Below are positions 2,951-58,739 of a DNA stretch of 64,000 nt, piece after piece. The stretch is taken from NCBI RefSeq assembly GCF_031769215.1, contig NW_026781943.1, forward strand, positions 744,001 through 808,000, read 5' to 3'. The notes beneath the pieces were generated by a model, which saw nothing but the letters and a program-made list of their open reading frames with translations, was not told the origin of the DNA and made no database searches. A program made the translations under genes and the position numbers. This stretch comes from Ylistrum balloti. Taxonomy: Eukaryota. Positions within the stretch are counted from its first letter, which is position 1. Each line of letters begins with the position of its first letter.

Positions 2951-5454
2951 TTAACTTCTTCTGACTTAACAGTTTTACCAAAAGACGTTTTAATGAACAT
3001 GTGTTTTGCAAAGACATCATGAAATCGACTCAATTTGTTTTATTTGCAATATATCTATTCATCAATGTTTTTTAGACCTCAGAAAAACTGAAAAAATAAT
3101 CCAGGAAAACAATGATTTTTATATCATTTGTCGATATTTCAATGAGGAAGCACCTTTATGTATATGAGTGGGCTTATTACCAGACATGGGCTTGTTGCTG
3201 AATTGATAAGGCCATCTTTATAGGACTAAAAAATCTGAAGATATTGGTACAATACACATATTTATAAGTAGACCTTACACGCCATCCATACAAATCACTT
3301 TTTTCTGTCGTATAATTTGTAAATGCAGCAAAGAACTTCCAACTCTCATTTTTCCCCCTGTTTTATAACAATGCCTACTTCAGACATAAAACTTCAACTC
3401 TGAACTAAGTTTAAAGTGGCCTTTCAGAAATCCTGAGCCACACCCCCATACATGTCATCTTATATCCTCCCTTCCGTGTGTCAGCAATAAAGGACCAATA
3501 CAACATAACCTTTGGTGTACAGATACAAACATGGTATGTAACATGTACCAAACACACTTTAAAATGTATATAAACCAACAGTATTCTACAGTATCACATA
3601 AAGATTGAAAAATTGTATTCACAGCTGTTAGTCTGCTGTATTCACTGAATTTATTAGATGTAATTTTAATCAAGACTCAAGAAAATAAATCTGAGGTTTA
3701 ACGAATTACAACTTCCATACTACACACAGCACTTATAAATCCCTCACTCCAGGTACCAATACAAGAAACACCTGGATTTAATATAAATGTACCATCATCA
3801 TTTTACTACATCACTCTCCTGCATCAGTGTCATAACACAATAAATGTTATTACTGACATGTCATTGATTGGCTATGAATACACAGGATTAAGGTGTGTCA
3901 TGACAGTTTGCATTATCACACAAAAGGAAGAAACCGAGATCCATTGTGATGTTATAGACACAGGGACATGACGCTGCAAGGATAAGCCTTTATAATGTAA
4001 CATCATTACTTTAAAGCAATGTTGTATCAAACCTTTGACCCTTTTGACATTTGACCCTTACGTTCCTGTATAAAGAAGTACATACCTTGACCGTCTCCGT
4101 GTCCACAATGACAACAGCCCTGCCCAGATCATCTTGTAGTGACCAATTGTGATGGTCACTGTCAGCTGACCAGTGGTAATCACACTAAAGCTGACCTATC
4201 ATAATCAACAATGGATCTGGAAATGACCGCTTGGAAAGATAGGTTCTTTTCTGACTTATTCCTTCCTCTGCTTCATATTGTTAAAAACAGAACTTTGAAA
4301 TAGTCTACAGACGATATCACAGTTTGTTGTAAAGAGTGGACAGTTTCAACAATTTCCAATTTACCTTGACATTCTAGTCAAGGTCACAAGTCTAGGTCAC
4401 CTCTTCAATTTGTCTCTTCCTACATCTTCTTCAAGACTTATTTAAGTATTATCAGATTAGTCATAGTGAACATCCTGCATTGATAAAATCTCTGAAGCTA
4501 GAATTTCTATAAATTGGTTCAATTATCTTATACATCACAGTTGCAGTCAATACTGGTTACCATAGTGAGGGCCAGTCAGATGGTCAGTCTGGTGACCTTG
4601 ATGTAAACATTTCCGGGTGTTGACCACCTGCCCCATGATCGGATAGTATTAGTGTGAACTGCTTGCTGTACACTACTTTCAGCTCCTGTATCAATAATTC
4701 ACGTCCACTTTTGTCTCCTGAACAGTCCTGCTATGTAACACATTTCAACTTTTTTTTTTCACTACAGATGAGAAACAGTATCGACCAATAGCACACTATG
4801 TAGCCACAATTTGCGTACATATCCCTTGGGGATAAACCACTTTTCTGGTAAATCCTATCATATCTTCTGAGTCTACCTAGGGTATCAATGCTATACACAG
4901 TATGCCTTGCAGCACTATATTCTGACCACACTCTCAGTACATATCTCTTCTATATACCAGGCCAGGAAAGATATACCATTTTATGTCCAGTGGCTTATTA
5001 AGTGAATCCCGTGATTTTTGTCTTAATTCTAATTGCTTTGCCTGACAACGCAGTGGCATGTTTCCCTTCAAAGAAGAAGTATAAACAAATCTAAGTTTTG
5101 CTTAATCTAACAGAAACGTGCCTGTGTGTTCAGTTATAACACATGTATACCAACCTTGCCCATTATGTTCAGTTCAGAATATGTGGACATAGAGATGGAA
5201 AAATCATCACAAGCTAACTGAAATTGAATTCTGTACATACAGTCATCAACCAAACCTTAACTTATTAACTGAATGCTTCTACTTTCCAAGGTCAAACTTC
5301 GCAACACATCAGTTTTACAACGTCTCTTCACACAGGGAACATCGTTAAATCATTTCACTGTGCTGGCTTCCTTCTTTTTAAAGTAAAAGTTGTCTCCCTT
5401 AACTGTGAAACCAAAGGAGTTTTATCACCAAAGTGTAAAGGAAATGTAGATCCT

Positions 5455-5740
5455 GCTGCTAATTTCAGTACTTATAATTTCTGTACTGCAAATCTCTGCT
5501 GCTTATTTAAGTACTGCTAATCTGCTCCTAACTTCAGTGCTGCTAATTTTTAGACTGTTTATCTCTGCTGCTAATTTAAGTACTGCTAATTTTTAGTACT
5601 GCTAATTTCTGCTGCTAATTTCAGCACTGCTAATTTCTGGACTGCTTATCTCTGCTGCTAATTTAAGTACTGCTAATCTGCTCCTGATTTCAGTGCTACT
5701 TATCTTTAGTACTGCTAATATCAGTACTGCTAATTTCCAC
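5455..5740. repeat. Degenerate minisatellite, 14-16-bp unit (ACTGCTAATTTCAGT-like)
   Basis: TGCTAAT recurs throughout, and a ~70-bp block at ~5484 is repeated at ~5641. Confidence 0.8.
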
Positions 5741-8563: not shown

Positions 8564-8859
8564 TACTGATAGAGGGTTTTTTTCACAGTCAATGTGGCCC
8601 TATAGACATATAGATATGGTTATTAAATCTGCTGATGAACTTGCTTTTGACAATCAAACTGATCTATATTTCTGTCATCACATCATTTTCTTTGGGTACT
8701 GAAGTTAAATCTAATTACAGGATAACCCCACTGTGATTTTTTTTTTTAATTTTCAGCATTTTTCCATGACAGTGGATAAAAATGTAATTCACACCTGTTA
8801 TATTTATATCCAAATGGTATAATTATTATTTAAAGAATAAACAGAAGGTGTAATTAATG

Positions 8860-10020
8860 CTTACACCTGATAATCAGAAAGTGTTATTATCATTTACACT
8901 TGTTATCCACAGGGTTTAAATATCATTTACACCTGTTACCAAGATGTAATTATCATTTACAGCTGTTACCCAGAACTTGCAGAAGGTGTAATTATCATTT
9001 ACAGTTGTTACCTAGAAGGTGTAATTATCATTTACACCTGTTACCCAGATGTAATTATCATTTACACCTGTTACCCAGATGTAATTATCATTTACAGCTG
9101 TTACCCAGAAGGTGTGATTATCATTTACAGCTGTTACCCAGAAGGTGTAATTATCATTTACCCAGATGTAATTATCATTTACACCTGTTACCCAGATGTA
9201 ATTATCATTTACAGCTGTTACCCAGAAGGTGTAATTATCATTTACAGCTGTTACCCAGAAGGTGTAATTATCATTTACAGCTGTTACCCAGAAGGTGTAA
9301 TTATCATTTACAGTTGTTACCTAGAAGGTGTAATTATCATTTACAACTGTTACCCAGACTGTATAATTATCATTTACACCTCTTAACCAGGTTGTGTATA
9401 CGTAATTATCATTTACACCTGTTAACCAGACTGTATAATTATCATTTACACCTGTTAACCAGGTTGTGTATACGTAATTATCATTTACACCTGTTAACCA
9501 GACTATATAATTATCATTTACACCTGTTAACCAGGCTGTGTATATGTAATTATCATGTACACCTGTTAACCAGGTTGTGTATATGTAATTATCATTTACA
9601 CCTGTTAACAAGACACTATAATTACCATTTATACCTGTCAACCAGTGGGTGTAATTACCATTTACACCTGTTGCCCAAATGGTATTAAGTATCATTTACA
9701 CCTGTTAACCATAGAAGGTAATAATAATTTCCTTGTGTTATCCAGATGCTGTAATTATCATTTATACTGTTGAGGGTGTTATTACAATTTACACTTGTTA
9801 CCCAGTGGGTGTAATTACAATTTACACCTGTTAGTAGTATAAGTATCATTTACACCTATTAACCAGAGGGTAAAATTACATTTACACCTGTTAACCAGTG
9901 GGTGTAATTACCATTCACAGCTGTTATCTTGAGGGTGTAATTACAATTTACACCCTTTAACCAGAGGGTATAATAACCATTTACACCTGTTAACCAGAGG
10001 GTGTAATAATCATTTATATT
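8860..10020. repeat. Minisatellite, core GTAATTATCATTTACA[C/G]CTGTTACCCAGA(AG)GT, unit variants of 21/30/33/39 bp, ~35 copies with degenerate flanks
   Basis: Directly visible. It generates the repetitive ORFs 8900-9688(+), 9114-9386(+) and 9321-9695(-). Confidence 0.95.
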
Positions 10021-24126: not shown

Positions 24127-24617
24127 AATATATACAAGGCTTCCTTATATGGAATCTAACCCTTCCACAAGAGGGTGAATATTAATTTTAATATACATGG
24201 CTTCCTTATTTGGAATCTAACCCTCCAACAAGAGGGTGAATATTAATTTCAATATACAAGGCTTCCTTATATGGAATCTAACCCTTCCACAAGAGGGTGA
24301 ATATTAATTTTAATATACATGGCTTCCTTATTTGGAATCTAACCCTCCAACAAGAGGGTGAATATTAATTCTAATATACAAGGCTTCCTTATATGGAATC
24401 TAACCCTCCCACAAGAGGGTGAATATTAATTTCAATATACAAGGCTTCCTTATATGGAATCTAACCCTCCCACAAGAGGGTGAATATTAATTCTAATATA
24501 CAAGGCTTCCTTATATGGAATCTAACCCTCCCACAAGAGGGTGAATATTAATTCTAATATACAAGGCTTCTTTATATGGAATCTAACCCTCCCACAAGAG
24601 GATGAATATTAATTCTT
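24127..24617. repeat. Tandem array A: 61-bp unit, ~8 copies
   Basis: Unit AATATACAAGGCTTCCTTATATGGAATCTAACCCTCCCACAAGAGGGTGAATATTAATTCT; period 61 checked at 24136/24197/24258. Confidence 0.95.
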
Positions 24618-24639
24618 ATAGATCCCTACAATCTTTCTC

Positions 24640-25925
24640 CTAAGGAAGAGTTTTCCCTAATATTTCCTTTTGGGTCGAGATCTCGCCCATCTTCCCCCTT
24701 TGAATCCCCCAAATCTTCCCCTTAGGATGAGATCTCCCTAATATACCCCCTTTGTTTGAGATCTCCCTAATCTTCCCATTGTGATGAGACCCCTAATCTA
24801 CCCCGTTTGGTTGAGATCTCCCTAATCTAACCCCTTTGTTTGAGATCTCCCTAATCTTCCCATTGGGATGAGACCCCTTATCTACCCCGTTTGGTTGAGA
24901 TCTCCCTAATCTAACCCCTTTGGTTGAGATCTCCCTAATCTTCCCCTTAGGATGAGACCCCTAATCTACCCCCTTTGGTTGAGATCTCCCTAATCTTCCC
25001 ATTCGGATGAGACCCCTTATCTACCCCCTTTGGTTGAGATCTCCCTAATCTTCCCCTTAGGACGAGATCTCCCTAATCTTCCCCTTAGGATGAGATCTCC
25101 CTAATCTTCCCCTTAGGATGAGATCTCCCTAATCTTCCCCTTAGGACGAGATCTCCCTAATCTTCCCCTTTGGTTGAGATCTCCCTAATCTTCCCCCTTT
25201 GGTTGAGGTCTCCCTAATCTTCCCCTTAGGATGAGATCTCCCTAATCTTCCCCTTAGGATGAGATCTCCCTAATCTACCCCCTTTGGTTGAGATCTCCCT
25301 AATCTTCCCCTTTGGTTGAGATCTCCCTAATCTTCCCCTTTGGTTGAGATCTCCCTAATCTTCCCCTTAGGATGAGATCTCCCTAATCTACCCCCTTTGG
25401 TTGAGATCTCCCTAATCTTCCCATTGGGATGAGACCCCTAATCTACCCCCTTTGGTTGAGATCTCCCTAATCTTCCCCTTAGGATGAGATCTCCCTAATC
25501 TACCCCCTTTGGTTGAGATCTCCCTAATCTTCTCTTTAGGATGAGACCCCTAATCTACCCCCTGCGGTTGAGATCTCCTTAATCTTCCCTTTAGGATGAG
25601 ACCCCACATCTACCCCCTTTGGTTGAGATCTCCCTAATCTTCCCTTTAGGATGAGACCCCTAATCTACCCCCTGCGGTTGAGATCTCCCTAATCTTCCCT
25701 TTAGGATGAGACCCCTAATCTACCCCCTGCGATTGAAATCTCCCTAATCTTCCCATTGGGATGAGACCCCTAATCTACCCCCTGCGGTTGAGATCTCCCT
25801 AATATACCCCCTTCGGTTGAGATTTGCCTAATCTTCCCATTGGGATGAGACTCCTTTTATCTTTCCTCAGATGAGATCCCCCAATCTTTCAACTTTGGTT
25901 CAGATCCCTCCTAATCTTCCCCTGC
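24640..25925. repeat. Tandem array B: 27-29-bp C-rich units, ~45 copies, almost all containing CCCTAA
   Basis: Variants GAGATCTCCCTAATCTTCCCCTTAGGAT, GAGATCTCCCTAATCTACCCCCTTTGGTT and GAGACCCCTAATCTACCCCCTGCGGTT. Confidence 0.95.
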
Positions 25926-26180
25926 CGCAGTATCAGCATTTATTTGCATAGCCAAGGTAAATGATATTTGACAGAAGTAATCATTCACATCATCGGAGAT
26001 AAAATGGCAGAAGCCTTCTCTTATCCTGATTGTAATATTTAAAATACAAGATGAAACAAATTTTGTTCAATATCTTTAATATTCTGGTGAATGCAGTAGC
26101 AAATGGTGACGAATCATTACAAGCTGCGACAGAAGCTTATATCAGTATCATACACATACAGTGTTAAGCTTGTAGGTGAT

Positions 26181-27621
26181 ATACATTTACCAAATACACA
26201 AGTCTTGTACTCAATCAGGATCAGAGTTAATCAATAACATTTACCACTAAAGGTTATAAATGAGGTATTTACCAAATACACAAGTCTCGTACACGATCAA
26301 GACCGCAGACTAAATGACATATATTTACCAAATATACAAGTCTTGTACAAGGTCAAGACTGAAGATTATACATGACAGATATTTACCAAATATACAAGTC
26401 TCGTACACGATCAGGATCGAAGACTAAATGACATATATTTACCAAATATACAGGTCTTGTACATGATCAAGACTGAACTATAAATGACAGATATTTACCA
26501 AATATGTCTTATATAAGTCTCGTACACGATCAAGACCGAAGACCATAAATGACCAATATTTATCAAATATACAAGTCTCGTACACGATCAGGATCGAAGA
26601 CTTTAAATGACAGATATTTACCAAATATACAGGTCTTGTACATGATCAGGATCGAAGACGTTAAATGATAGATATTTACCAAATATACAAGTCTTGTACA
26701 CGATCAGGATCGAAGACGTTAAATGACAGATATTTACCAAATATACAGGTCTTGTAGACAATCAGGATCGAAGACTTTAAATGACAGATATTTACTAAAT
26801 ATACAAGTCTTGTACACGATCAGGATCGAAGACTTTAAATGACAGATATTTACCAAATATACAAGTCTCGTACACGATCAAGACCGAAGACTAAATGACA
26901 GATATTTACCAAATATACAGGTCTTGTACAAGGTCAGGATCGAAGACTAAATGACAGATATTTACCAAATATACAAGTCTTGTACACGATCAGGATCGAA
27001 GACTTTAAATGACAGATATTTACCAAATATACAAGTCTTGTACACGATCAGGATCGAAGACTTTAAATGACAGATATTTACCAAATATACAAGTCTTGTA
27101 CAAGGTCAGGACCGAAGACGTTAAATGACAGAAATTTACCAAATATACAAGTCTTGTACACGATCAGGATCGAAGACGTTAAATGACAGATATTTACCAA
27201 ATATACAAGTCTTGTACAAGGTCAGGACCGAAGACAATAAATGACAAATATTTACCAAATATACTGGTCTTGTACACGATCAGGATCAAAGACGTTAAAT
27301 GACAGATATTTACCAAATATACAAGTCTCGTACACGATCAGGATCGAAGACTATAAATGACAGATATTTACCAAATATACAAGTCTTGTACACGATCAGG
27401 ATCGAAGACTATAAATGACAGATATTTACCAAATATACAAGTCTTGTACACGATCAGGATCGAAGACTTTAAATGACAGATATTTACCAAATATACAGGT
27501 CTTGTACACGATCAGGATCGAAGACTTTAAATGACAGATATTTACCAAATATACAAGTCTTGTACACGATCAGGATCGAAGACTTTAAATGACAAGATAT
27601 TTACCAAATATACAAGTCTTG
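26181..27621. repeat. Tandem array C: 56-58-bp unit, ~25 copies
   Basis: Unit ATATTTACCAAATATACAAGTCTTGTACACGATCAGGATCGAAGACTTTAAATGACAG; copies at the left end are degenerate. Confidence 0.95.
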
Positions 27622-37173: not shown

Positions 37174-40100
37174 ATGATTCCCAGGTTGAATAAGTTGGCT
37201 CATTCGTCGTGTTGTAGAACCATCAGCGCAAATGTCAATAATATTTATCAAACTAAGACACATCCTGCCATCTGTACGCACAGAACGGCCCTCCTAGTCC
37301 AACCAGGGAGTCATTCTTACTCCACAATATCTGGTGTGTCGCGTTTGGACCGTTCTTACTCTTTGTCAGACGAACCAACAGAGAAGTACAGACAACTAAA
37401 TGCAACAATACTTCCTAAACATACACTCTTACATACGTGTGGCAGACATATATTGACACATCAGAAAAGTTCTCCATGGCTCCCATGTGGGGTCGGTTTA
37501 GGGGTAACGGGGTCATCAAGAGGTTTTACAGCGTATGTAAGTCATATATTTTACAAGTTGGCTGGGATTGTCATTGAGAGTGAGCCGGTTGGAGCGTCAA
37601 GACAATTTTTTATTGGACTCCATGACATTATTGGAATGCCTTGGTGGCTAACTATTATTTCCGGGACGTTGATGTTTAGAATGACACTGCTTCCTTTAGC
37701 TGTTATCATTATCAAATCTCAAGCGAAGCATGCCTCAGTTTTACCAGAGATCCATGCCAGAGCAACAGATATTCATTCAAATATTTTGGCACATGGGCTG
37801 TATCATCATATGAAACCATTTACAATGAAGAGAGAAACAGCTTCACAAGTATGTGTCTACATTTACCTTAATGCTATCATGTATTTGGGAGGTACATTTC
37901 TCTGTGATCCTTTTATAAATGCATAGAAATTACAGGTTAAAACTAATCTTTGGATGATATTTAACAAGGACATGTTAAAAACCACTTTTATTACTTAACA
38001 TACATATTTTGCATGTAGTATAATTCTAAATGTATCTGCTGACAGTTCAACAAGTAACAAATGAGTAATAACTATAGGAGAGTGTATATTTAACACTATG
38101 TAAAGGGTGTTTCAGAAAACTTGTCTCAAATTAATGTTTCATAAAATTAAAAATATTTATGAAAATATAAAGAGTCGAAAGGGTACATTCATACAGTTTC
38201 ATGGTTTGACTGTACTGTATGTCTAAATCATTAAAAGGTGCTATTCACTTGTGTGTATTTTGTACAATTTCTAACTTTTTTATTCATATCTTTGTGATAA
38301 AAGAGTTTTGGTATCGACAATATTTACACTAATATAAGATTGATATATGTAACAATATTATCATTGGTTTTCAATTACTTGCAGATAAGGCAGATGAAGC
38401 GTGAAATGTATGTAAAGCATAATTGTTCCCCAATAAAACCATTTTTGAATGTGTATGTCCAAGTGCCAGTGATTGTAAGCTTTGGAGTCGCTCTGCGATC
38501 TTGTACAGGACGATTTGGACCGATAGGTTGGTATAGTCACTGAAATATGTAGCCCCAATAGAACATTTATATACCTGTGTAGCATGGTATTGTGAAGCAT
38601 GGTGAAATGAACAGGGGTCAAAATACCATAATGGTGAAATGAACTCTCCCGCCTCCTGCTCTATGATAAAGTAAAGCAGCTTTATAATTTGATGTTTCTT
38701 CAGTGAATTTTTGATCACTTTACTTAATTATGTTCCTCCATACATTAAAAAAAAGCCCAGAAAAATAACAAGTGTGGGGAAATTTAGGGTGGGGGCGGGT
38801 GATGGGGGGGGGGGGGGGGCAGGTTCACTTTACCATGAAGCATTTCACTATTTTCTTCATTCATTGTTATATAAAATTCAGATCCTAATTTTCAGCTCAC
38901 TAGGTCTGAAGAACTGGTGAGGTTATGCCATAGGGATGGCATCTGCTACTGGTCATGAACAACTGATTGGATTTTAGGGGAATGGGAACATTTTTTTGTA
39001 AAATGGTGTGTCCTGGCCCCTAGGGCCTGTAGGGTGGGGCCCAAAAGGGGAAATATTGCTAGTTCTTCAAAATTCTTCTTCTCTTGTAGGAATGATTGGA
39101 TTCTGCCTAAATTTGGTCTGTAGCATTTGGCAAATGGGAATTAATGGTCTCTGCCCTCATTAGTGAAAGGAAATCAATTTTGTATAAACAGTCTCAGACC
39201 ATGGTATGGGTGGGATGGAGTGATTTGGTCTGAAAAGTATTTTAGCTGACCCCACAGAGAGTAGGGACAGAGGTTTTGAGACCATTAGGAAAACAGATAT
39301 GTTGTCTGTTTTCTGATTAGATGATAAGAATTTTTTTCCTTAAGTTTTAAGCCAAGCTAAAGCCAAGTGAGCCCTACAGACCCTATGGGCCTTTTGTCCT
39401 AATTCATACACATGTGAGAAAGATGATTAGCATTATAATATAGATATTGAAGATATGCTCCAGTGTTTGTCACTTGTTGTCACAAAATTAAATAATGCAG
39501 TAGTGATATTTTGTTCGTTTTGATTATTTCAATTCTTCACCTGTCTTTGTTGATATATTATCAACTTAAACAAGTCAGCAATGATTGGTTAAACCTGATC
39601 ATATGTCTATAACGATTGGTCAAAGTAAATCACAAGTCAGCAATGATTGGTTAAACCTGATCATATGTCTATAACGATTGGTCAAACTAAATCACAAGTC
39701 AGCAATGATTGGTTAAACCTGATCATATGTCTATAACGATTGGTCAAACTAAATCACAAGTCAGCAATGATAGGTTAAACTTGATCATATGTCTATAATG
39801 ATTGGTCAAACTAAATCACAAGTCAGCAATGATTGGTTAAACCTGATCAGATGTACCTCTTTGTTTCAGCGGATCATTATTTTCAACCAGAAATGATCTG
39901 CGAAGGCATCTCGTGGATTTCGAACCTTACAGTTGCAGACCCATACTGTATAATTCCAACAGTCAGCTGCTTCACATCTCTTTTTGCACTAGAGGTAGGA
40001 TATGTTGTTCTTTGTCCTCACAGATTTCTGTTAGTGAGGACAAAACTACGTTTTCTGGCAATAAGTTTATGCTTGGTAACAGGCTGTCATATGTCTTTTT

Positions 40101-41795: not shown

Positions 41796-41924
41796 ATTTG
41801 CCATTGATCACAAGTGTGTTTGTTGTTAGTATACATTTATACAGTAGTAACAATGAATTTGGTCCACTATACATCCTCTTAGTATTCAGGCTATCGCATT
41901 TCGATTTATATACAAACCCTATTT

Positions 41925-43000
41925 GATTAGAATTCCCGTTTATATGGACCCTGTATTAGAATTCCTGTTTATATGGACCCTGTATTAGAATTCCGGTTTA
42001 TATGAACACTGTATGATTAGAATTCCTGATTATATGAACACTGTATGATTGGAATTCCTGATTATATGGACCCTGTATTAGAATTCCTGATTATATGAAC
42101 ACTGTATGATTAGAATTCCTGTTTATATGGACCCTGTATTAGAATTCCGGTTTATATGAACACTGTAAGATTAGAATTCCTGTTTATATGGACCCTGTAT
42201 TAGAATTCCTGATTATATGGACCCTGTATGATTAGAATTCCGGTTTATATGAACACTGTAAGATTAGAATTCCTGTTTATATGGACCCTGTATTAGAATT
42301 CCTGTTTATATGGACCCTGTATTAGAATTCCGGTTTATATGAACACTGTATGATTAGAATTCCCGTTTATATGGACCCTGTATTAGAGTTCCGGTTTATA
42401 TGAACACTGTATGATTAGAATTCCTGATTATATGGACCCTGTATTAGAATTCCTGATTATATGAACACTGTATGATTAGAATTCCGGTTTATATGAACAC
42501 TGTATGATTAGAATTCCTGTTTATATGGACCCTGTATTAGAATTCCTGATTATATGGACCTTGTATTAGAATTCCTGATTATATGAACACTGTATGATTA
42601 GAATTCCGGTTTATATGAACACTGTATGATTAGAATTCCTGTTTATATGGACCCTGTATTAGAATTCCTGATTATATGGACCCTGTATGATTAGAATTCC
42701 TGTTTATGTGGACCCTGTATGATTAGAATTCCTGTTAATATGGACCCTGTATGATTAGAATTCCTGTTAATATGGACCCGGTATGATAAGAATTCCTGTT
42801 AATATGGACCCGGTATGATTAGAATTCCTGTTAATATGGACCCTGTATGATTAGAATTCTTGTTTATGTGGACCCTGTATGATTAGAATTCCTGTTTATA
42901 TGGACCCTGTATTGTAAGAATTCCTGTTTATATGAATCCTGTTTGATTAGAATTCCTGTTCATAGGGACCCTGTATGATTAGAATTGCTGTTTATATGAA
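41925..43000. repeat. Minisatellite of mixed 29- and 32-bp units, ~35 copies, nearly all with GAATTC
   Basis: TAGAATTCCTGTTTATATGGACCCTGTAT (29 bp) and TAGAATTCCGGTTTATATGAACACTGTATGAT (32 bp), often alternating. Confidence 0.95.
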
Positions 43001-47463: not shown

Positions 47464-50400
47464 TTACACGGAGGTCTCTGAGTTAAGTCTCAACACAAAC
47501 TTGTTATTTTTAGGATCAATGACCTCTTCCGTGAGATTAAAATGTGGAATACGTTTCACAGTGACAAGAAGCGATACTTCGTTTTGTCGTAGCTGAAATA
47601 CTGTGTTGTGTTCCATCTCTCTAGTAAGAAGTTGATCACAAACCAAAACCCACTTCTGTATGGGGCGATATGCGTGATCGTCCATAATCACTGGACCCTG
47701 CGTCAGGTAACGCTCGATAAATGCCCGCGGGCTCATGTCGTGGCCCACACACACAGCCAGATGTTCCAGCACTGCATCCATCGTGTAACGGGGCTGTTGT
47801 CGTGTGATACGCAGGTACTTCTGTAATGCTCGTGCCATAGACGGAAATACAGCATGAGCAGCCTCCTTTGGATCCATAGGAACAGGAGCACCTGGAAACG
47901 ACAAAAGAAAATCTATAACTAGCGGTAGGTAATGGCATTCAAAACTTCAATTCAACAAGATTTGGTCATTCTTTCGGCAATTTTACTTATTCCTTTTGTG
48001 AAACCACAATTACTATGGTAAAAACAAACTTCTATATAGATATATACATAAATTTCAATTTCATACAAAATCTATTAAATGACTCTCTGAATTTTCTGTG
48101 ACCAATTTCATAAAACAAATTTGATATGGAAAACTATACAATATGATTCATATCACATGATAGAGTCTTATTGAAATTATTGTGAATAAAAGTGCTTTCT
48201 TGAAGTCATTGTCATAGTGTCCATTTCTGTGTCATAAAGTAATGTGTTAGTGTTTGACATAATTTCATGTTATAATTAGTTTTGTACAACGACTTCATAC
48301 TCAAAAATATTTTCAAACAAACTTAAAATCAGTTTTTTTATTTTTATCAACAAAATCATCTTCATTTTGATTTTTGAAGTTTCACGGTAAGTCATGAGTT
48401 ATATATTATTTTCAAGGTGGAGTGTACACAACCTTCAATATTGTTTCAATAACGACACATTCCAGGACAATGTAGATTTTATCCAAAGAAAACTCTTTGA
48501 TTTCAAAAATGTGTTAACCAATTTTCTTCAGCAGCTATTAAAGATATTTCAATACCATGATCCTAAAAATTCTGAACACATGTAACATTGTCTAATAAAC
48601 TGCCATAGAAATACTGAACACATGTTACATTGTCTATCAAACTGTTACAAAAATACTTTGGTTTTTAAAACCTGGAAAGAGCCTACTGATTAGATCAGAC
48701 TGGGTTACAATTATTTGTAATGTGCCTCCACTGGGTGAGTGCCAGATGTGACCCCAGACTCCATCTCCCATCTGGGGCCCCCTACTGTGTCTAACACTCA
48801 ACTCGGCAGCAATGTCTTACCTGGAATGTTTTGGCAATATTGTAACTTCAGGGGCTCAACACAGGTTTAAAATACATATCAGGAACCCCTTATTGATGTC
48901 ATAACTTAGATTCAGGGGAAAACAAAGAACAAAGTTAATTTTTTTGCGATTTATTTTGCTGAAAATTCTTGGCCTGTATCCTTAAAATTCTGAAGTCTTC
49001 ATATTTGCTGAATTTCTCTATTTTGAAATTCATTCCTTGGCTGTTATTTTCAAATTTACAATCACTTTTCAGGTAACAAGAATGAGCAGCATTTTATGAC
49101 ATTTAATGATTTTCTGGACACAGAACCAACTTTATATCTCTTATCATTGGGACTCATCAAAATTTTGGAATTTGATGCCCTGAAAATATTGTTGAAAAAT
49201 ATGTAAACAGAATCCCTAGGTCTGAGAATATACCTAATAATTGTCTTCAATGTTTCTACTCTGTTAATATTACTGCAGCAGGTGCCCTCATAGATTGGAA
49301 AATTATAGAAAAATTATCTGATAAATTAGGAAAATATTTTTTTAATTTTGCTTCTTTTTGGGAAAATAACACATTTTTGCTTCAGGAATCAGCCTTTTTT
49401 AGCTGCAAAATAGAGAAAATTAATATTGGTCCTAGCCTACTAAACTTGGAAAAAAATGTCTTAAAATAAGTGTATGTGACATTGAAAATGGAGATTACAC
49501 ACGTACTGCAATTATCTTGCAATATGCTTATATGGGAAAAATATTACTTCTCTAAATCAGAAAGTTGGCTTATTGAAGCACCCCTGGGGAACAACATGTC
49601 ACTTCTTCCTCAATGTCAGGGAGTGGGTTTATTACAGGAATACTGGGAAACAGCATATCACTTCTTCCTCAATGTCAGGGAGTGGGTTTATTACAGGAAT
49701 ACTGGTAAACAACATATCACTTCTTCCTTATGGTCAGGGAGTGGGTTTACTACAGGAATACTGGGAAACAGCATATCACTTCCTTAATGTCAGGGAGTGG
49801 GTTTATTACAGGAATACTGGGAAACAGCATATCACTTCTTCCTCAATGTCAGGGAGTGGGTTTATTACAGGAATACTGGGAAACAGCATATCACTTCTTC
49901 CTCAATGTCAGGGAGTTGGTTTATTACAGGAATACTGGTAAACAACATATCACTTCTTCCTTATGGTCAGGGAGTGGGTTTACTACAGGAATACTGGGAA
50001 ACAGCATATCACTTCTTCCTCAATGTCAGGGAGTGGGTTTATTACAGGAATACTGGGAAACAGCATATCACTTCTTCCTCAATGTCAGGGAGTGGGTTTA
50101 TTACAGGAATACTGGTAAACAACATATCACTTCTTCCTTATGGTCAGTCAGGAGTGGGTTACATACAAATTCTAGTCAATGTCAGAGAAACATTACATAT
50201 CACTTCTTCTGAGATATTACACACAATGTCAGAGAGTGGGACATTACATACAAAGGAATACTGGGAAACAGCATATCACTTCTTCCTCAATGTCAGGGAG
50301 TTGGTTTATTACAGGAATACTGGTAAACAACATATCACTTCTTCCTTATGGTCAGGGAGTGGGTTTACTACAGGAATACTGGGAAACAGCATATCACTTC

Positions 50401-53400
50401 TTCCTCAATGTCAGGGAGTGGGTTTATTACAGGAATACTGGGAAACAGCATATCACTTCCTTAATGTCAGGGAGTGGGTTTATTACAGGAATACTGGGAA
50501 ACAGCATATCACTTCTTCCTCAATGTCAGGGAGTGGGTTTATTACAGGAATACTGGGAAACAGCATATCACTTCTTCCTCAATGTCAGGGAGTGGGTTTA
50601 TTACAGGAATACTGGGAAACAGCATATCACTTCCTTAATGTCAGGGAATGGATTTATTTTAGGACAATGAAATTGCATTGGTTAACAAATTGCAATTTTC
50701 TACTATCAGCGATATAGGCAGGCTAATAAACAAACATTGCAGTACTTTACAGCCATTCTTCTTTTATCAGGCTCTTGTCTATTTAGGAATTGGTACCCAA
50801 CAAGAAGCTAGCCATTACAATCTGTACCCTTCATCAACAATGAATTACACTACTACATGCAGGTTTAATGTAATGGACCATATCCTTTGTCTAAGTGTGG
50901 GACAATAGCTGATTTTTACTTTAAGATACAGAATGTAATTTCAGCTCTAAACACCTCGACTACAGAACATCATCACATAGAAAATATGGTTGGGTTGATA
51001 TGGTTTTATTGGCTGTTGTAACCTACAGACTTTTGATCTCCCCATGCTAATTTTGTAGGCGGAACATTCCTCCTCAGAACCCCTAATGGGAAAATTAGTA
51101 AAGTCTGTTTGTTATTAGGATATTTCTCTTGAAGTAGGGAGCTGGTGTTTTAAGAGTATATAGATAGTCCTCGCAGGTCATCTCAGACAAAGAGTTATAC
51201 TCGTCACTGGTTTTATCTGGTTTTATCGACAGGTACATTTATAACAACGTTCCATTCATATATCAGGGAGTCTACTCCACATCAGGTTCAGAATTCTTCT
51301 TCAACAATTTTCGCAACGGACTGTTTGTCATCATTAAACCATTGTCCCTACTAAGTTATTTTAATTATCATTTTAATGACTGGTACTTATGCCTAACAAA
51401 TAACTAGCTTTGGTTTCCTGTCACTTTAGAAACATTTTATTTGTCTACTTTTAAGACAACCACTGTGAAAGTCATGATCCTCCATAAAATATTCAAAATA
51501 ATGAAATTGTTTACCTACCTACCCTATGTCTTGACAGACATTTAACAGGAAACCAGTATGTTAAATATTCGTCCTAAGTATTACCTAGATTGATCTCAAA
51601 TTAAAAAATATGTACCCGCCTGGTAAAGGCTTTGAGTAATATCTTTTTCGAAGTAGTAATTTTAAATCACAATGTCTAAAGATATAAAGAAATTTCAGAT
51701 TATCAAAAAGCAGAGGTTTTCTGCAAGTACCTAATTTTTGAAATTTAACTACAATTTCAAAATCGCAAAGAACTGAAATTGCAAAATTTGCATGTTGTCT
51801 TTTTGTTGTAAATGCATGAGAAAGGCATCTATAGAGATGACATACCTATATGTACCTGAACACTTTCAAGTCATGAATATTTCTCCAGTTTGATGTAAGA
51901 ATCTACACTGGTACAGCGAAACTTCTCAATATCATGTTCCATTTGTCAGGGAAAATGTGATAATAATAAGAATGTGACATTAACAGTTGAAACATTTTTT
52001 TCTGACATCTTAACCCGAAAGTTAATCTTCAGATCTAAATGCATCTAACCGACTTGTTTCGTACAAAAAATATTTGACGACAATAGAAATTTGATTAGCT
52101 TTTCCCATAAGAGCAGTGATTTTCCTTAACTTTTGTTTGAATATTCTTTCTTTATTCAATGAAACTGACCAAAAAAAAATTACAAAAAAAAAAAAAACTG
52201 CAAAGATATATTGTGGATTTTCACAAAAATTGCACAGAGTCAAAATCTCCCAATATACAGTAAATCAGGGTTTTCTATAAGAGCCGGTCGCCGGCCAATT
52301 TGACCGGCTACTTTGATCATTTGGCCACCTACACCAATCCAGTTCCGTAATAATGTTCCGTACACGACTACACGTACACGGCAGGCCAGCCTCCTACTTT
52401 CACTACACAGCCTACTACTAACAAAATTATGGAAAACCCTGGTAAATAATACTTGTTTATGCCAATGCCAATAGTCTGAAATACAGTATTTTTTGTATCA
52501 GAGAGAGAGTGCTACATACTATAAGACTTTTTCAGTAACAACTTGATATCATAGGTTAACCACTGTGTAACCGGTTTTTGAAATTTCATTTTGTAAATTC
52601 AAGATCGAAAAGTGTTAACATATTTTAATTTACAGTAATATAAAGATTCACCAAGATGCATATCAAATTCAATTTTTGTTGACACTGCTATAAAAATTTA
52701 AAAACATTATTTAGTATTACAGTCGATCAAAGGTTACAATACAATGCTGAAAATGCCTCCTGATTGTCGTGACATGGTCTATGATTTTTGCCATTAGAAA
52801 CATTCCATGTTATTGGTTATATGTAGGTTAAGTGTTTTAAAATAATTTTTCATTGTTTCTTTGATTCATACTACATTGATATCGTGAGTTCTGATACCAT
52901 GTTATTGTACTATATTTGCCGTTTATGTTCCTGTTAATGTTGACAATAAATACAACTGAATGAAACAAATAAGAAAAACCATGAAATAATGTACATCATG
53001 ATGCTCTTCAACAATGTAATCTCATATATCACGCATCACTACAACTTTTCTGTTACAAACCTTGTCAGGATTTTTCACCAGATCAGTATCAGTTGATTTT
53101 CCTCCTGACTAAAGAACACTTACCTTGTTCATCTTGCATGCGTTTGATGTGAGTAAATGCCTCCTCAGCAGCTACAATCAGTCGAGCACGACGTTTACGC
53201 ACTCTGCGGTCATACTCCACCTCCTCGTAGAATCGGTCATTATGACTGGCATCTCGTCGACGAGCTGCTGCAGCAAATATCGCTCTGGACTTCCCCTGAT
53301 TATTTGTTGTGTTCCCATCAACTTCGTAGAACTTAAGTCCCGACATCTTGGAAGGTCGCTTGGCAACCATTTCCAAATAAGGGTTGTAGACAGGGAAGTC

Positions 53401-55609
53401 ACGATAGTATTGTTCCAATACCCAAGCTGCAGCTCTCTGTATGCTTAAGCACCCAATGTTATATGTGCGGCTCTCCCCGTCCGGAGATCGTGTGACTTTG
53501 ATGACAAATTGTGGCTGAAGTTGTCTGATTTCAAGCAAGATGACAGCAATGTAATGAATGAAAAGCAGAGCATCTACAAGTGACACAGAAAACTGTACAA
53601 TCTTGTAATAGTCTGACATCTGCTCCTTAAAGATCCGGACTCCATAGAACAACCAGAATGCAAATGTTAAAACAAATACAAGAAATAAAACTACAGCACG
53701 AAATACAAACACCCGAGGCATCGTCGCCTTCGGTTGACGAAAAAATAAGGCCACTGTTCCAAGTAACAAAATCAGCAGTTTAAACGCACAACTGATTAAG
53801 AGTCCTTCACACTCCGGATCACAAGGCAGCGTCTGCCAGCCGTTGATCTGAAGTTTGGGTAAGATTATCATTGCAATGGGCGACAGGAACCCAGCAATGC
53901 TGAGGACACCTGCCAAGGCTGTGCCAACGTATCGGGCGCAGCCTATCCCGATACTGCTCTCGAAACTCTCCTTGGTATTGAACTTACGGATATCCTCCAT
54001 GGAGAACCCTGTCTCGCTTGTATTACCTGTAAGTAAAACAAAATATCTAGAGACTGACAAAGTACAACCTTGCAACATATCAAAGCTTTTTCATCCCCTG
54101 TTGAACTTCCCTCAAAAGATATAAAAAAAAATTTGTATAGGATCATTTTGCCGCCAATGATATTTTGCAACAAACAATTAGTCTTCAATCACAGTATTTC
54201 TGATTACAATATTACCTCTAGAATCTATGTGTAAATTTAACATTATATCTTTCACACCCTTACCTGTTAAGGCTGGGGCATCCCTCCTTGCATGTGTAGG
54301 CTTTTGCATTATTCCCGTCTTACCTGTGCAGGTTTTAGTGTCCCCCCCCCCATCCTATACCTGTGTAGACTGTTTTGTTATATCCCCAGGCCTTACCTGT
54401 GTAGACTGTTGTGTTATATCTCCAGGCCTTCTCTGTGTAGGCTGTTTTGTTATCTCCACCTTACCTGTGTAGGCTGTTGTGTTATCCCCCACTTACCTGT
54501 GTAGGCTGTTGTGTTATCCCCCACTTACCTGTGTAGGCTGTTGTGTTATCCCCCACTTACCTGTGCAGGCTGTTGTGTTATCCCCCACTTACCTGTGTAG
54601 GCTGTTGTGTTATCCCCCACTTACCTGTGTAGGCTGTTGTGTTATCCCCCACTTACCTGTGTAGGCTGTTGTGTTATCCCCCACTTACCTGTGTAGGCTG
54701 TTATGTTATCCCCCCTACCTAGTTGGTTGTTGTGTTATCCCCCACTTACCTGTGTAGGCTGTTGTGTTATCCCCCACTTACCTGTGTAGGCTGTTGTGTT
54801 ATCCCCCACTTACCTGTGTAGGCTGTTATGTTATCCCCCCTACCTAGTTGGTTGTTGTGTTATCCCCCACTTACCTGTGTAGGCTGTTGTGTTACCCCCC
54901 CTTACCTAGTTGGTTGTTGTGTTATCCCCCACTTACCTGTGTAGGCTGTTGTGTTACCCCCCCTTACCTAGTTGGTTGTTGTGTTATCCCCCACTTACCT
55001 GTGTAGGCTGTTGTGTTACCCCCCCTTACCTAGTTGGTTGTTGTGTTATCCCCCACTTACCTGTGTAGGCTGTTGTGTTACCCCCACTTACCTAGTTGGT
55101 TGTTGTGTTATCCCCCACTTACCTGTGTAGGCTGTTGTGTTACCCCCACTTACCTAGTTGGTTGTTGTGTTATCCCCCACTTACCTGTGTAGGCTGTTGT
55201 GTTACCCCCACTTACCTAGTTGGTTGTTGTGTTATCCCCCACTTACCTGTGTAGGCTGTTGTGTTACCCCCCCTTACCTAGTTGGTTGTTGTGTTATCCC
55301 CCACTTACCTGTGTAGGCTGTTGTGTTATCCCCCCAGTTATCATCCTGTGGAAGTATCTGAACCTCTATCCTCTCCTCCCCTGATGGTCTGTCCTCACAC
55401 TCCGACATGTTTCCTGGCATCTTAATGGTCACAGAACGATCATCCCGGTCCCTGTCTCGGTCCCGTTCCCTGTTCATGCCACTCCGTTCAGAGCCACGGC
55501 TGCTGTGCCTCCCCACATGGTGCCGATGGTGATGTCTACTTCCATGACTGTGCCTTGACCGTTCAGATCGGTCACTACGTCCAGACCGTACAGATTCTGC
55601 CCCGTCCAT
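47464..55609 (-). CDS. VANGL: Vang-like protein / strabismus (planar cell polarity), 543 aa. Coding exons (-): 55609-55309, 54026-53124, 47891-47464
   Basis: Phase-1 GT-AG introns, total 1632 nt. Motifs IEVQILPQDDNWG, four hydrophobic TM segments, LEIRQLQP, RSPDGESRTY, SIQRAA.WVLEQYY.DFPVYNPY, AAARRRD.SHN.RFYEE, VRKRRARL..AAEEAFTHIKR, AIF-like AVFPSMARALQKYLR.TRQQ and the C-terminal PDZ-binding ETSV. Confidence 0.98.
49590..50650. repeat. 59-bp minisatellite, ~18 copies, with a degenerate block at ~50145-50255, in the last VANGL intron
   Basis: Unit AATGTCAGGGAGTGGGTTTATTACAGGAATACTGGGAAACAGCATATCACTTCTTCCTC; it explains the repetitive ORFs 49470-50717. Confidence 0.95.
52266..52441 (-). mobile_element. 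Second copy (inverted) of the 176-bp MITE at 11019, with a 6-bp TSD
   Basis: Its reverse complement aligns end to end with 11019-11194 at over 90% identity by eye; GTAAAT flanks both sides (52260-52265 and 52442-52447). Confidence 0.9.
54258..55335 (-). repeat. Minisatellite of 31-32-bp units made of the VANGL exon 3' end plus its splice donor; ~28 homogeneous and ~5 degenerate copies
   Basis: Unit on the - strand: TGGGGGATAACACAACAGCCTACACAG|GTAAG. The first copy is the real exon end (55309). Confidence 0.95.
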
Positions 55610-56829
55610 TCTTTGATACTGGCTTGGTCTGCGGGGCCAGTGGTCAAGAGGCCAATAGAACTCACCCTGCAATATATAAAGTGTTTTCCTCAGTCAAAAT
55701 AAAGTGTAAGTACTGAATTCTTTTTGAAAATTGAAGACCAAAAGCAAAAAACACTAAGGATAGATTTTTTGTAACCTCTTTATCATAAAAATTACTACAA
55801 AGATATCAACCAAAAGTGCAAGTCACTTTTAATGAATTTACTTTTTGAGTTAATTCACAGAAAGACAGACTGCTTGTAGCTTGATTCGTTGTTAATTTAC
55901 AACTAATATTCCAAATCTAGATCTTAAACTTACAAACTGTATTTATGACATTAGCATTGCCCTTTTCAATTTTGAAAGACAACATCTGCTAGAAAAATTA
56001 ATTCAAAACTTAGAATATGCCATGATATTTTTTCCTTTCTTTTTTAACCAAAAAAACCTAACATCTTAAACTTACAAACTGTGACATGCAAGTGATACCT
56101 TTCACTGTAATTTGTTTACATCCTTTCCTTTGTCACTGACAACTCTAACTAACAGGGAAACAAAGCTGTCAACCCTTGTAACTTCCCTTCTACCCAGTCT
56201 TCAAAGGGAGGCATTGTGTATATTTTAACACTATGGTGTGTGGCAGACTAGCAGAGGTGTCAAAACATTGGCCCAGGGCAAAGTCAGGGCAGAAACCACT
56301 CTACATGGTTTTCCCTGTCAGATAATTATTGTAAATCTCTACACCAGATAATTATTCTCCAAATGACTTTAATCTAAATGCTAACATTACAGCTTTTATA
56401 GAAACTGGTACAATTAACACCTCCAGGCTACTTGCTTTCTATATTTATTTATAACTGTAGGGTTTTATATTGATAAAATAATAATATACCATTCAGGGCT
56501 CATGTTATAATTTCAGTTGAAATGTGTTCTATAAACACAGATACCATTGAATATATATACCTGTCTGACCTAGTAAAAACATGCACTTTATGGGGTTGTG
56601 TAATTATTTACACAGATTACAACCAGTACAGAAGTATATAGAAAATATTTCTATAATGTATTTTTACTAGATACTATTGAATACTATTTGCAATGCAATT
56701 TAAAAAATACATTGAAATCAGCTACAATGAATACTAGTATATATATATATATATATGTATCAATTCATTAATCAATGCACCTTTTGGTTTGTTTAATGTT
56801 ATTTCCTTTTTGATCCCTGTGTGCATTAC

Positions 56830-56935
56830 CGTTTGATGGCTCTAATGACCCTTTATGTGTTGACGGGCCGTTAAGAATGTAATAATAATAATAATAATAT
56901 AATATGATGATAATAATAAAATAATAATATCAATA
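56830..56935 (+). mobile_element. 3' end of a SINE-like element with an (AAT)n tail
   Basis: CTCTAATGACCCTTTATGTGTTGACGGGCCGTTAAG followed by (AAT)n resembles the GACCCTG.CTGTTAATAGGA.GTTA tail of the 8505 fragment. Confidence 0.45.
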
Positions 56936-58739
56936 AATGCAGTATACAATTTATCCTGTCAATATCTAGATCTGATTACAATGAAAGTAACATTTATAAT
57001 TTATAATGTAGGATTAATATTACTGTTTAGACAGCTACATCAAACATTAACTTTACCAAACAGTTATACCTGTGTATACAAACTAAGTTAAAAAAAAACC
57101 CACAATAGCAGTAAATAACTCATGATAAACATGTGTACATTACCTAAGCAGACAGCCCCTTCCCTTGAAATGCTTCATACCACTTTCCTACATATCTATA
57201 TATTAGTAAAATGGCACTCTTATACTATACATGTTTATATATCTTTATACAACAATGATACAGATGGGCCCTCTTCATCCCCTGCCCCTCCAACTGGTTA
57301 CATACTTTGCCCTAGATGAAGCTTGGTAAACATACAGTGCCCCTGCTCACAAATCAATGTTATCTTTCCCCTTGTCCTTTTCTAGCTCCATATGTTTTAT
57401 CTTCCTTCCCTGTAAAACACTGGCAGCTTTACATACCTATACCCGAAGTCTAAATGTCACTATTGTTACACCTCACTGCCTCAGCTATTACTAGGCCCAA
57501 TGAACACCTGTTATGTATATACAGATACCACAACTCCTTGTGCCCCAACGTTTACATACCACACCTGGCACCCACTGTCTTTGTACAGATCAGCCTGATA
57601 ATCATGTTACCATCTTTAAGAGCTTTTAAACCTTCTTTTGTTCCTAAAACACTGCTGGTTTACTGAACCATTGATAATGTATAGAGTGCTGTCTCTACTT
57701 ACACCTCCGAGTCTTCAAATGATTTATCCTACGTTGTTTTACAGGTCAATTTTATTCTGGTGTCAACTTTTTGTTTGTCTGGGTCTTTTTTCTTTTGAAA
57801 ACTTTAATCATTTAATGCACATCAAAGATATTTAATCAACATTGATTCTTTATGTATCAGTTTAACTTCCTTTTTCTATAAATATACTGTATTTATATAC
57901 ATAATAACTAGGGTGAACTAAATTTGTATTTCTCTTTGGATTTTTTACATATTATTATCATTCATGAATCTGCAGCATATCAATTAAAAAATCCATTGAC
58001 ACATTTTAAATTATAATTTATCATTACGAATCAATCATACGTTCAAACTTTCAAACAAACATGGTGATGTTGTCTACTTGGCTACGACAAAATTCAATTT
58101 ATAATCATCATGTACTTTTATTTTTGTGTCAAAAAATGTCAAGTCTCTAGTATTGTATAGGATATAATTTTCCATGCTCTATTCTTTGAAAAACTTCAAG
58201 CAATCTAGATGCAATCTTTCATGCCATTTTACAATTTGTTTACAAGTCATTTAAAAACCTTCAACTTGAAAATGGATTTTTAACTCAATACATTGTTTCA
58301 AAGCGACTATTATCATTGATCATCTACTGTCAGATCCAGACAATAGCCAGTACATAAGTGGAAAATAACTGAAGGTTAAGATTTGTTTGAGGCGCTTTAT
58401 GTTTTAGTGATGATAATATCTTATACGCCCCTATATCTGAAAATTTAATTGGCAACTTAACCTACAAATAAAGGTCGTAACAATGCTCTACCTGTATGCT
58501 TTTAACATACTTCCCGTAAAAAATTTGGAATTAAATCTTTTGATGTAATAATGAACCAGCAGTATCTTAAAACAGACTTGAAATATATATGTGTGAGTAT
58601 GTGAAAAAGAACAAGACAGTATGTGCTAAAATAATTTTTGATTTTTCAAGTTATTGATTTTGAGAGTTCTTACATAAACTATTCAGGCTGTTTTGTTTAC
58701 TATTTCAGAAATATTTAAATAGTCATTACTATCCAACTG

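What the first reader, a model, noticed from the sequence alone, without database searches (positions are those of the whole stretch)
54258..55335. VANGL exon-intron junction amplified into a tandem array of ~28 splice donors, where every extra donor leads to the same premature stop
Seen: the repeat unit is the last ~26 nt of VANGL coding exon 1 (encoding WGDNTTAYTG) plus GTAAG. I count 18 copies of CACAG|GTAAGT including the real one at 55309, one CACAG|GTAAGG, and 9 variant copies AACTAG|GTAAG or GTAGG. The 2nd donor (+31 nt) gives ACT AG|G TAA on joining exon 2, and reading into any later donor passes AGG TAA, so only the most 5' donor yields protein. Known: this segment corresponds to the conserved N-terminal Ser/Thr phosphorylation cluster of Vangl proteins, and Vangl function is dosage sensitive in vertebrates. 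Inference: the array is a battery of perfect competing or decoy U1 sites. It could route transcripts to NMD and make VANGL output depend on VNTR copy number, or it could show unusually strict exon-definition choice of the most 5' donor.
Basis: partly seen in the sequence, partly recalled or inferred. Interest (0 to 1): 0.82.

Follow-up and report, generated by a model that had tools for sequence, protein, structure and literature searches.

The report
Splice-donor echo minisatellite in scallop VANGL
The first coding intron of a scallop's only VANGL (planar-polarity) gene is mostly a tandem repeat copied from the end of the preceding exon plus its splice donor, a real but already described kind of repeat ("mirage", like human F7 intron 7) that most likely leaves splicing unchanged.

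Summary
On the minus strand, window 55334-54258 holds about 33 tandem units of 31-32 nt. Each unit copies the last 26 nt of a VANGL coding exon plus GTAAG. Eighteen sites are the full consensus CAG|GTAAGT, counting the real donor (GT at 55308). None of the 28 extra AG|GT donors gives a frame-preserving, stop-free product; the first stop is TAA at 55276-55274.

The genome is most likely the scallop Ylistrum balloti, and VANGL is single copy in it. The same junction carries echo arrays in Argopecten, Mizuhopecten and Pecten, each built on a different unit. Pearl oyster and oysters have the same intron position but no echoes.

Argopecten RNA contigs join the first donor directly to exon 2 despite three echo donors. 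The premature-stop rule is not conserved: in Mizuhopecten the second donor is in frame and stop-free. Arrays carrying consensus donors are about ten times commoner than a control pattern across this genome.

This scan has already reported the same kind of repeat on other DNA of this genome. It is a new member of a known kind (amphioxus "mirages", the human F7 IVS7 VNTR). A dosage or NMD regulatory role is unsupported but not excluded.

The parts
55309..55667 (-). VANGL coding exon 1. It is an internal exon of 359 nt, with the acceptor TATTGCAG|G at 55668/55667 and the ATG at 55609-55607. It ends ...GCC TAC ACA G in phase 1.
   Evidence: Pfam PF06638 matches at E 5e-8. The peptide is 100% identical to the N-terminus of P0121, Ylistrum balloti. 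The acceptor was inferred from Argopecten mRNA against its genome.
54027..55308 (-). Intron 1, 1282 nt. About 82% of it is the echo array. The last ~236 nt are non-repetitive and end in a normal pyrimidine-rich acceptor ...TTTTACTTACAG.
54258..55334 (-). The whole exon-end/donor echo minisatellite. Its first unit is the last 26 nt of the exon plus GTAAGT.
   Evidence: TRF; unit table; shuffle control
54814..55308 (-). Proximal block, units 2-16. It is a 62-nt higher-order repeat of two 31-nt unit types, one ending AACTAG|GTAAG and the other CACAG|GTAAGT.
   Evidence: TRF period 62 with 95% matches
54465..54813 (-). Middle block, units 17-28. These are mostly 32-nt monomers that match the real junction word at 31-32 of 32 positions.
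54258..54464 (-). Distal decayed units 29-34, matching the junction at 19-27 of 32 positions. Two of them have lost the GT.
55274..55276 (-). First in-frame stop (TAA) met when the real donor is read through. The same TAA arises when donor 2 is joined to exon 2.
53124..54026 (-). VANGL coding exon 2, 903 nt, encoding the transmembrane core. Its donor is CAAG|GTAAGT.
   Evidence: Pfam PF06638 at E 6e-139; 100% identical to P0121
47464..47891 (-). VANGL coding exon 3. It ends with the ETSV PDZ-binding tail and the stop codon.
   Evidence: Pfam PF06638 at E 1e-62

Best explanation
This is a 'mirage'-type minisatellite. Tandem duplication of the exon 1/intron 1 junction of the single-copy VANGL gene arose in the scallop lineage. 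It has since been expanded, homogenised and partly decayed by unequal exchange, slippage or conversion.

The exon copy is the only unit under purifying selection, for the WGDNTTAYTG coding sequence and for the donor. It therefore acts as the anchor that keeps re-seeding the array. This would explain why each scallop's units carry that species' own exon-end and donor variants.

The extra donors are most likely silent. The splicing machinery pairs the upstream acceptor of this 359-nt internal exon with the first donor it meets (exon definition, or 5'-to-3' oriented choice as shown for human F7 IVS7). Any leak to a later donor carries a premature stop well upstream of the exon 2/exon 3 junction and would be removed by NMD.

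Shown here: the anatomy, the exon origin, the presence in four genera and absence in outgroups, first-donor use in Argopecten mRNA, and the genome-wide abundance of donor arrays. Inferred: the silence of the echoes in this species, NMD of any leak, and the anchor/re-seeding dynamics.
For: - Array anatomy.
- Exon motif conserved in all molluscs examined, with the same intron position in Pinctada and oysters but no echoes there.
- Echo arrays at the same donor in Argopecten (3 echoes, ~76-nt period), Mizuhopecten (~30-nt units) and Pecten (about 30 units of 50-60 nt).
- Pecten's units carry its own synonymous TAT and its own GTACGT donor.
- Argopecten RNA contigs L061/L062 are 99-100% identical to the Argopecten genome, and their protein P0124 is 100% identical. 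They join the first donor to exon 2.
- The RefSeq model for Ylistrum balloti (P0121, 543 aa) equals the first-donor product in length and in the exon 1 and exon 2 sequence.
- VANGL is single copy in the genome, so the productive donor must be used.
- Three CAGGTAAG at 15-40-nt spacing occur 6126 times, against 593 for the reversed control.
- Precedents: amphioxus mirages and F7 IVS7.
Against: - No RNA data exist for this species. The RefSeq model may rest on homology.
- Assembled transcript contigs show only the dominant isoform and would miss NMD-degraded minor forms.
- All echo donors here are the perfect consensus. In the F7 study, only perfect-consensus pseudo-sites could draw some splicing away from the first site, so some leak is plausible.
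- Persistence at one junction in four genera could also reflect selection.
Confidence: 0.78

Rival explanations
1. Regulatory decoy-donor array. The echoes compete for U1 and the acceptor, divert part of the transcripts to stop-containing mRNAs removed by NMD, and make VANGL output depend on copy number.
For: There are 17 extra perfect CAG|GTAAGT sites, and all extra donors lead to a stop. VANGL is single copy. An array is present at this donor in four scallop genera. Perfect-consensus pseudo-sites can compete in the F7 system.
Against: The stop property is not conserved: the Mizuhopecten donor at +30 nt is in frame and stop-free. Unit length, content and copy number (3 to about 33) differ in every genus. 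GT is no better conserved than the flanking positions, and 6 of 33 Pecten units lack it. The same kind of array is common across the genome (earlier scan notes), so no gene-specific role is needed. Argopecten mRNA contigs show only the first donor.
Confidence: 0.1
2. The array is a member of a dispersed minisatellite family that landed next to the exon. On this reading it is not a copy of the exon, and the resemblance to the exon end is secondary.
For: An unlinked 31-nt array (G000 C651:123.6-125.3 kb, ~57 units) shares the 17-nt core CAGCCTACACAGGTAAG. Other arrays (C288, C501, C752) share CTACACAGG.
Against: The exon-end coding sequence is ancestral: it has the same motif and intron position in oysters, pearl oyster and other molluscs that have no array. 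The exact 27-nt unit word occurs only at the VANGL locus. The C651 flanks are single copy, so there is no transposon vehicle. With this many ~30-nt arrays in the genome, shared 9-mers are expected by chance; the 17-mer is less likely to be chance and remains unexplained.
Confidence: 0.04
3. The echoes act positively. A cluster of U1 sites strengthens definition of the exon or protects the nascent transcript, or the CAG|GTAAGT junctions serve as recursive splice sites that remove the array stepwise and regenerate the same donor each time.
For: Each unit boundary is a juxtaposed AG|GTAAGT. Splicing between any two unit boundaries would regenerate the authentic junction (read directly).
Against: The 20 nt upstream of each AG are A/C-rich (about 9 of 20 pyrimidines), with no pyrimidine tract. 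The 31-32-nt units are shorter than any workable intron. The intron is only 1.3 kb, so there is no evident need for recursion or protection. No conserved unit design exists across genera.
Confidence: 0.04
4. Assembly artefact: the array is collapsed, expanded or invented.
For: Tandem repeats are error-prone in assemblies. Only one haplotype is present in G000.
Against: The array is about 1 kb with a structured series of variants, unique flanks and no N. The same phenomenon appears at the same junction in three independent assemblies of other scallops.
Confidence: 0.03

Closest known systems
Human F7 intron 7 (IVS7) 37-bp VNTR with silent 5' pseudo-sites (Borensztajn et al. 2006, PMC1557585)
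   Same: A minisatellite whose first unit spans the exon/intron boundary, so the real donor is followed by identical donors. In F7 only the most upstream donor is used. Secondary structure does not explain that choice there, and none is predicted here.
   Different: F7 has 5-9 units of 37 bp with a sub-consensus donor. Here there are about 33 units of 31-32 nt with the perfect 9-nt consensus, the gene is an invertebrate one, and the array is shared at the same junction by four genera. Splicing has not been measured in this species.
Amphioxus 'mirage' minisatellites (Adh3 and globin genes; Ebner et al. 2010, PMC3087553, citing Canestro et al. 2002)
   Same: Tandem duplications of exon/intron boundaries that carry copies of AG/GT signals, do not disturb normal splicing, evolve in concert with decayed edge units, and vary in length.
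   Different: These are in a mollusc, not a cephalochordate. The units are shorter than the globin mirages (150-160 bp). The array is on the donor side only. Orthologous arrays across genera are documented here.
Interferon-induced 6-16 (IFI6) gene minisatellite providing multiple splice donors (Turri et al. 1995; from my own memory, not retrieved here)
   Same: A tandem repeat at an exon/intron boundary in which each unit carries a donor.
   Different: There the unit is 12 nt, which preserves the frame, and several donors are really used, giving in-frame isoforms. Here the unit is not a multiple of three and every extra donor gives a stop.
Regulated unproductive splicing (poison exons or donors coupled to NMD)
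   Same: Alternative splice-site use would introduce a premature stop upstream of a later exon junction.
   Different: There is no evidence that the alternative donors are used, and the stop-inducing design is not conserved among scallops.

Membership tests
Mirage / exon-junction minisatellite (F7 IVS7 type) | A tandem array whose first unit spans the exon/intron boundary | tested here: met
   The unit is the last 26 exon nt plus GTAAGT. The array starts at 55334, inside the exon.
Mirage / exon-junction minisatellite (F7 IVS7 type) | Repeat units carry copies of the splice signal | tested here: met
   There are 28 AG|GTRNG sites in the intron, and 17 of them are the perfect CAG|GTAAGT.
Mirage / exon-junction minisatellite (F7 IVS7 type) | The exon is the source: the exon sequence is ancestral and the repeat is derived from it | tested here: met
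   The motif and intron position are conserved in molluscs that lack the array.
Mirage / exon-junction minisatellite (F7 IVS7 type) | Normal splicing uses the authentic, most upstream donor | tested here: inconclusive
   This is shown for the Argopecten orthologue by RNA contigs. For this species there is only the RefSeq model P0121 and no RNA.
Mirage / exon-junction minisatellite (F7 IVS7 type) | Concerted evolution with decayed edge units | tested here: met
   Units are homogeneous in the proximal and middle blocks and decayed in units 29-34. Pecten units share Pecten-specific exon and donor variants.
Mirage / exon-junction minisatellite (F7 IVS7 type) | Length polymorphism (VNTR behaviour) | not testable with these tools
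   G000 holds only one copy of the locus, and there are no reads.
Regulated unproductive splicing (AS-NMD) | Alternative sites introduce a premature stop | tested here: met
   All 28 extra donors give a stop in this species.
Regulated unproductive splicing (AS-NMD) | The stop-inducing design is conserved among related species | tested here: not met
   The Mizuhopecten second donor is +30 nt, in frame and stop-free. Periods differ in every genus.
Regulated unproductive splicing (AS-NMD) | The alternative sites are used in vivo | not testable with these tools
   No RNA-seq reads were available. The assembled Argopecten contigs show only the first donor.
Recursive splice sites | A juxtaposed 3'/5' splice site with an upstream pyrimidine tract and branch site | tested here: not met
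   AG|GTAAGT is present, but the 20 nt upstream are A/C-rich with about 9 of 20 pyrimidines (sequence).
Vangl / Strabismus protein family (the host gene) | Strabismus domain over the whole length and a C-terminal ETSV PDZ-binding tail | tested here: met
   PF06638 profile positions 16-503 are covered by the three exons. The ORF ends ...NSETSV.

The most novel reading that the evidence does not exclude
The array persists at this one donor in four scallop genera because it is selected. On this reading it is a copy-number-tunable battery of perfect U1 sites that sets the output of the single VANGL gene, either through leak to stop-containing isoforms removed by NMD or through U1-dependent effects on the nascent transcript. 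Array length would then be a heritable dial on planar-cell-polarity dosage.
Probability: 0.08. Interest if true: 0.75.

Novelty: new member of a known kind. Interest (0 to 1): 0.3.

Why it matters
As a single locus it is ordinary: one more exon-junction minisatellite.

Its value is as a clean natural test case for 5' splice-site choice. A single-copy gene that is a core planar-polarity component in other animals carries 17 extra perfect-consensus donors in identical local context. It is still expected to make its product from the first donor.

The comparison across scallops also shows that the same junction has been re-amplified, or homogenised with the exon copy, in each lineage. Together with the roughly ten-fold genome-wide excess of donor-bearing arrays, this suggests a mutational process in scallops that favours exon-donor junctions. 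That class-level question has already been raised by this scan on other DNA of this genome, and it is more interesting than this individual array.

Tried and rejected
- RNA structure masking the echo donors: the fold of 55400-55120 is no better than shuffles (z -0.56).
- Known RNA families: Rfam finds none in 53000-57000.
- Paralogue redundancy: rejected, because there is only one VANGL locus in 648.5 Mb.
- Transposon-borne repeat: rejected. The exact unit word occurs only at this locus, and the flanks of the similar C651 array are single copy.
- Plus-strand ORFs of 52 aa across the array: these are repeat artefacts.
- Selection on GT within units: no excess conservation.
- Other arrays in the window: the one in VANGL intron 2 (49584-50658) and the one at 41916-42998 do not resemble neighbouring exon ends.
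- Look-ups of P0121 (Ylistrum) and P0014 (Mercenaria) genes returned nothing on record, so no transcript or second assembly of this species was available.
Exons were searched one by one by reference, and full-length comparisons used database proteins.
- No contig looked human.

Full report
**What is there.** Read on the minus strand, window 55800-54000 shows a coding exon. It starts with ATG at 55609 and ends ...GAT AAC TGG GGG GAT AAC ACA ACA GCC TAC ACA G at 55309, followed by GTAAGT. The last 26 exon bases plus the donor are then repeated head to tail down to about 54258.

Tandem Repeats Finder gives a period of 32 with 30.9 copies, and a period of 62 with 14.4 copies at 95% matches. A listing of donor-like sites and a unit-by-unit table show three blocks:
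- Units 2-16 form a 62-nt higher-order repeat of two 31-nt unit types. One ends AACTAG|GTAAG and the other CACAG|GTAAGT.
- Units 17-28 are mostly 32-nt monomers that match the real junction word at 31-32 of 32 positions.
- Units 29-34 are decayed (19-27 of 32), and two of them have lost the GT.

Eighteen sites are the full consensus CAG|GTAAGT, including the real one. The 22-nt junction word hits the intron 23 times at 17/22 or better, against 0 in 200 shuffles.

**The gene.** Three open stretches on the minus strand match Pfam Strabismus (PF06638) at profile positions 16-58, 60-359 and 366-503. The last ends in ETSV.

The exons are 55667-55309, 54026-53124 and 47891-47464. This gives 543 codons, the length of the RefSeq protein of Ylistrum balloti (P0121). 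P0121 is 100% identical to the exon 1 and exon 2 peptides. The genome is therefore most likely that scallop or a very near relative.

A six-frame search of the whole 648.5-Mb assembly finds only this VANGL locus.

**Consequences of using an extra donor.** Reading through the real donor meets TAA at 55276-55274. Joining donor 2 to exon 2 creates the same AGG TAA. None of the 28 AG|GTRNG donors in the intron yields a frame-preserving, stop-free product.

**Origin.** The motif DDNWGDNTTA[Y/I]TG|NTSETGFSM is invariant or nearly so in scallops, pearl oyster, mussel, oyster, limpet and clam. The intron sits at the same codon position in Pinctada (624 nt) and in Magallana/Crassostrea (271 nt), and neither has any echo. 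The exon end is therefore ancestral and the array is copied from it. Without the array, the intron here would be about 236 nt.

**Related scallops.** The orthologous intron carries echo copies in all three other scallop genomes I could fetch:
- Argopecten irradians has three echoes with a period of about 76 nt.
- Mizuhopecten yessoensis has two near copies plus about ten units of roughly 30 nt.
- Pecten maximus has about 30 units of 50-60 nt that fill most of a 2.2-kb intron.

The constant part is the 26 exon bases plus the donor, while the intron-derived remainder differs in each genus. Pecten's units carry Pecten's own synonymous TAT codon and its own GTACGT donor. The arrays have therefore been rebuilt or homogenised together with the exon copy in each lineage.

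The stop rule is not shared. In Mizuhopecten the second donor lies +30 nt downstream, in frame and stop-free. Within units, GT is no better kept than the neighbouring positions, and 6 of 33 Pecten units lack it.

**RNA evidence.** Logan RNA contigs L061 and L062 encode P0124, which is 100% identical to the Argopecten protein from residue 46. They are 99-100% identical to the Argopecten exons. They join ...GCCTACACAG directly to the start of exon 2, so they use the first donor although three echo donors follow. Seven contigs carry this product.

The same contigs show that the coding exon is internal, being spliced to an upstream untranslated exon. Two further transcript contigs from unidentified pectinids show the same junction. 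No RNA for the window's own species was available.

**Genome context.** Three CAGGTAAG at 15-40-nt spacing occur 6126 times in this genome, against 593 for the reversed control, at many separate loci. The window alone holds about eight minisatellites, several with periods near 30 nt.

Earlier notes of this scan describe the same kind of exon-end/donor arrays in other genes of this genome and gave me the leads 'mirage' and F7. I checked both papers:
- Amphioxus mirages are tandem duplications of exon/intron boundaries that do not disturb splicing and evolve in concert.
- The human F7 IVS7 VNTR begins in exon 7. Its identical pseudo-donors are functional but silent, because the most upstream site is chosen. 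Only perfect-consensus pseudo-sites could draw off some splicing.

**Interpretation.** The best reading is a mirage-type minisatellite anchored on a selected exon copy. It is tolerated because the first donor after the upstream acceptor is chosen, with NMD as a backstop.

The regulatory decoy idea is not excluded. The echoes here are perfect-consensus sites, so some leak is plausible. However, the idea lacks support from conservation, and no gene-specific role is needed for a repeat type that is common genome-wide.

Predicted RNA structure does not distinguish the real donor (z -0.56). Rfam finds nothing in the region. A transposon origin is unlikely, because the exact unit word is unique to this locus.

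**Loose end.** An unlinked 31-nt array on contig C651 shares a 17-nt core with the VANGL unit, and its flanks are single copy. Its relation to the VANGL array is unexplained. It could be a secondary copy or a coincidence among very many donor-bearing arrays.

**Verdict.** This is a new member of a known kind, of modest interest as a locus, and useful as a natural test case for 5' splice-site choice.

Noticed in passing
G000 C651:123575-125350 (locus L006:1316-3088): An unlinked 31-nt minisatellite of about 57 units has a unit that shares the 17-nt core CAGCCTACACAGGTAAG with the VANGL array. Both ends are decayed, no exon is evident next to it, and both flanks are single copy. It may be a secondary copy of the VANGL array or a coincidence; this is unexplained.
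   Followed up: partly
G000 C288:~826.2-827.3 kb (L047), C501:~311.6-314.5 kb (L054), C752:~153.3 kb onward (L012), C751:~387-393 kb (L008): Further large arrays with 29-39-nt units share CTACACAGG or GGGTAACACAACAG with the VANGL unit. Given the number of ~30-nt arrays in this genome, these short shared words may be chance.
   Followed up: partly
whole genome G000: Three consensus donors CAGGTAAG at 15-40-nt spacing occur 6126 times, against 593 for the reversed pattern. Donor-bearing minisatellites are therefore a genome-wide feature of this scallop. I did not test how many start at a real exon end.
   Followed up: partly
L058:3880-4444 and 5080-5644 (Argopecten irradians VANGL): The last ~60 nt of intron 1 plus the first ~507 nt of exon 2 occur twice, 1.2 kb apart, at 100% and 99% identity to the mRNA. 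The mRNA holds one copy. This is either a local duplication or insertion, or an assembly duplication.
   Followed up: no
window 49584-50658: A 59/174-nt minisatellite of about 18 units lies in VANGL intron 2. It does not resemble the neighbouring exon ends.
   Followed up: partly
window 8842-10016, 24130-27621, 39570-39854, 41916-42998: Several more minisatellites have periods of 28-33 nt or about twice that. A period near 30 nt seems favoured in this genome. The 8842-10016 unit contains AAG|GTGTAA-like words on both strands.
   Followed up: no
L061:183-359 / 356-1843 and L062: In the Argopecten RNA contigs the gene caller splits VANGL into a 58-aa and a 495-aa ORF that overlap by 4 nt. This indicates a frame difference from the genome model within the His/Arg-rich N-terminal low-complexity part. 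It is unrelated to the junction.
   Followed up: no
window 54026-54021: Exon 2 begins GTAATA, so the spliced junction reads CAG|GTAATA, which itself looks like a donor. This is not conserved (Argopecten has GGCAAC) and is probably a coincidence of the Gly-Asn codons.
   Followed up: partly
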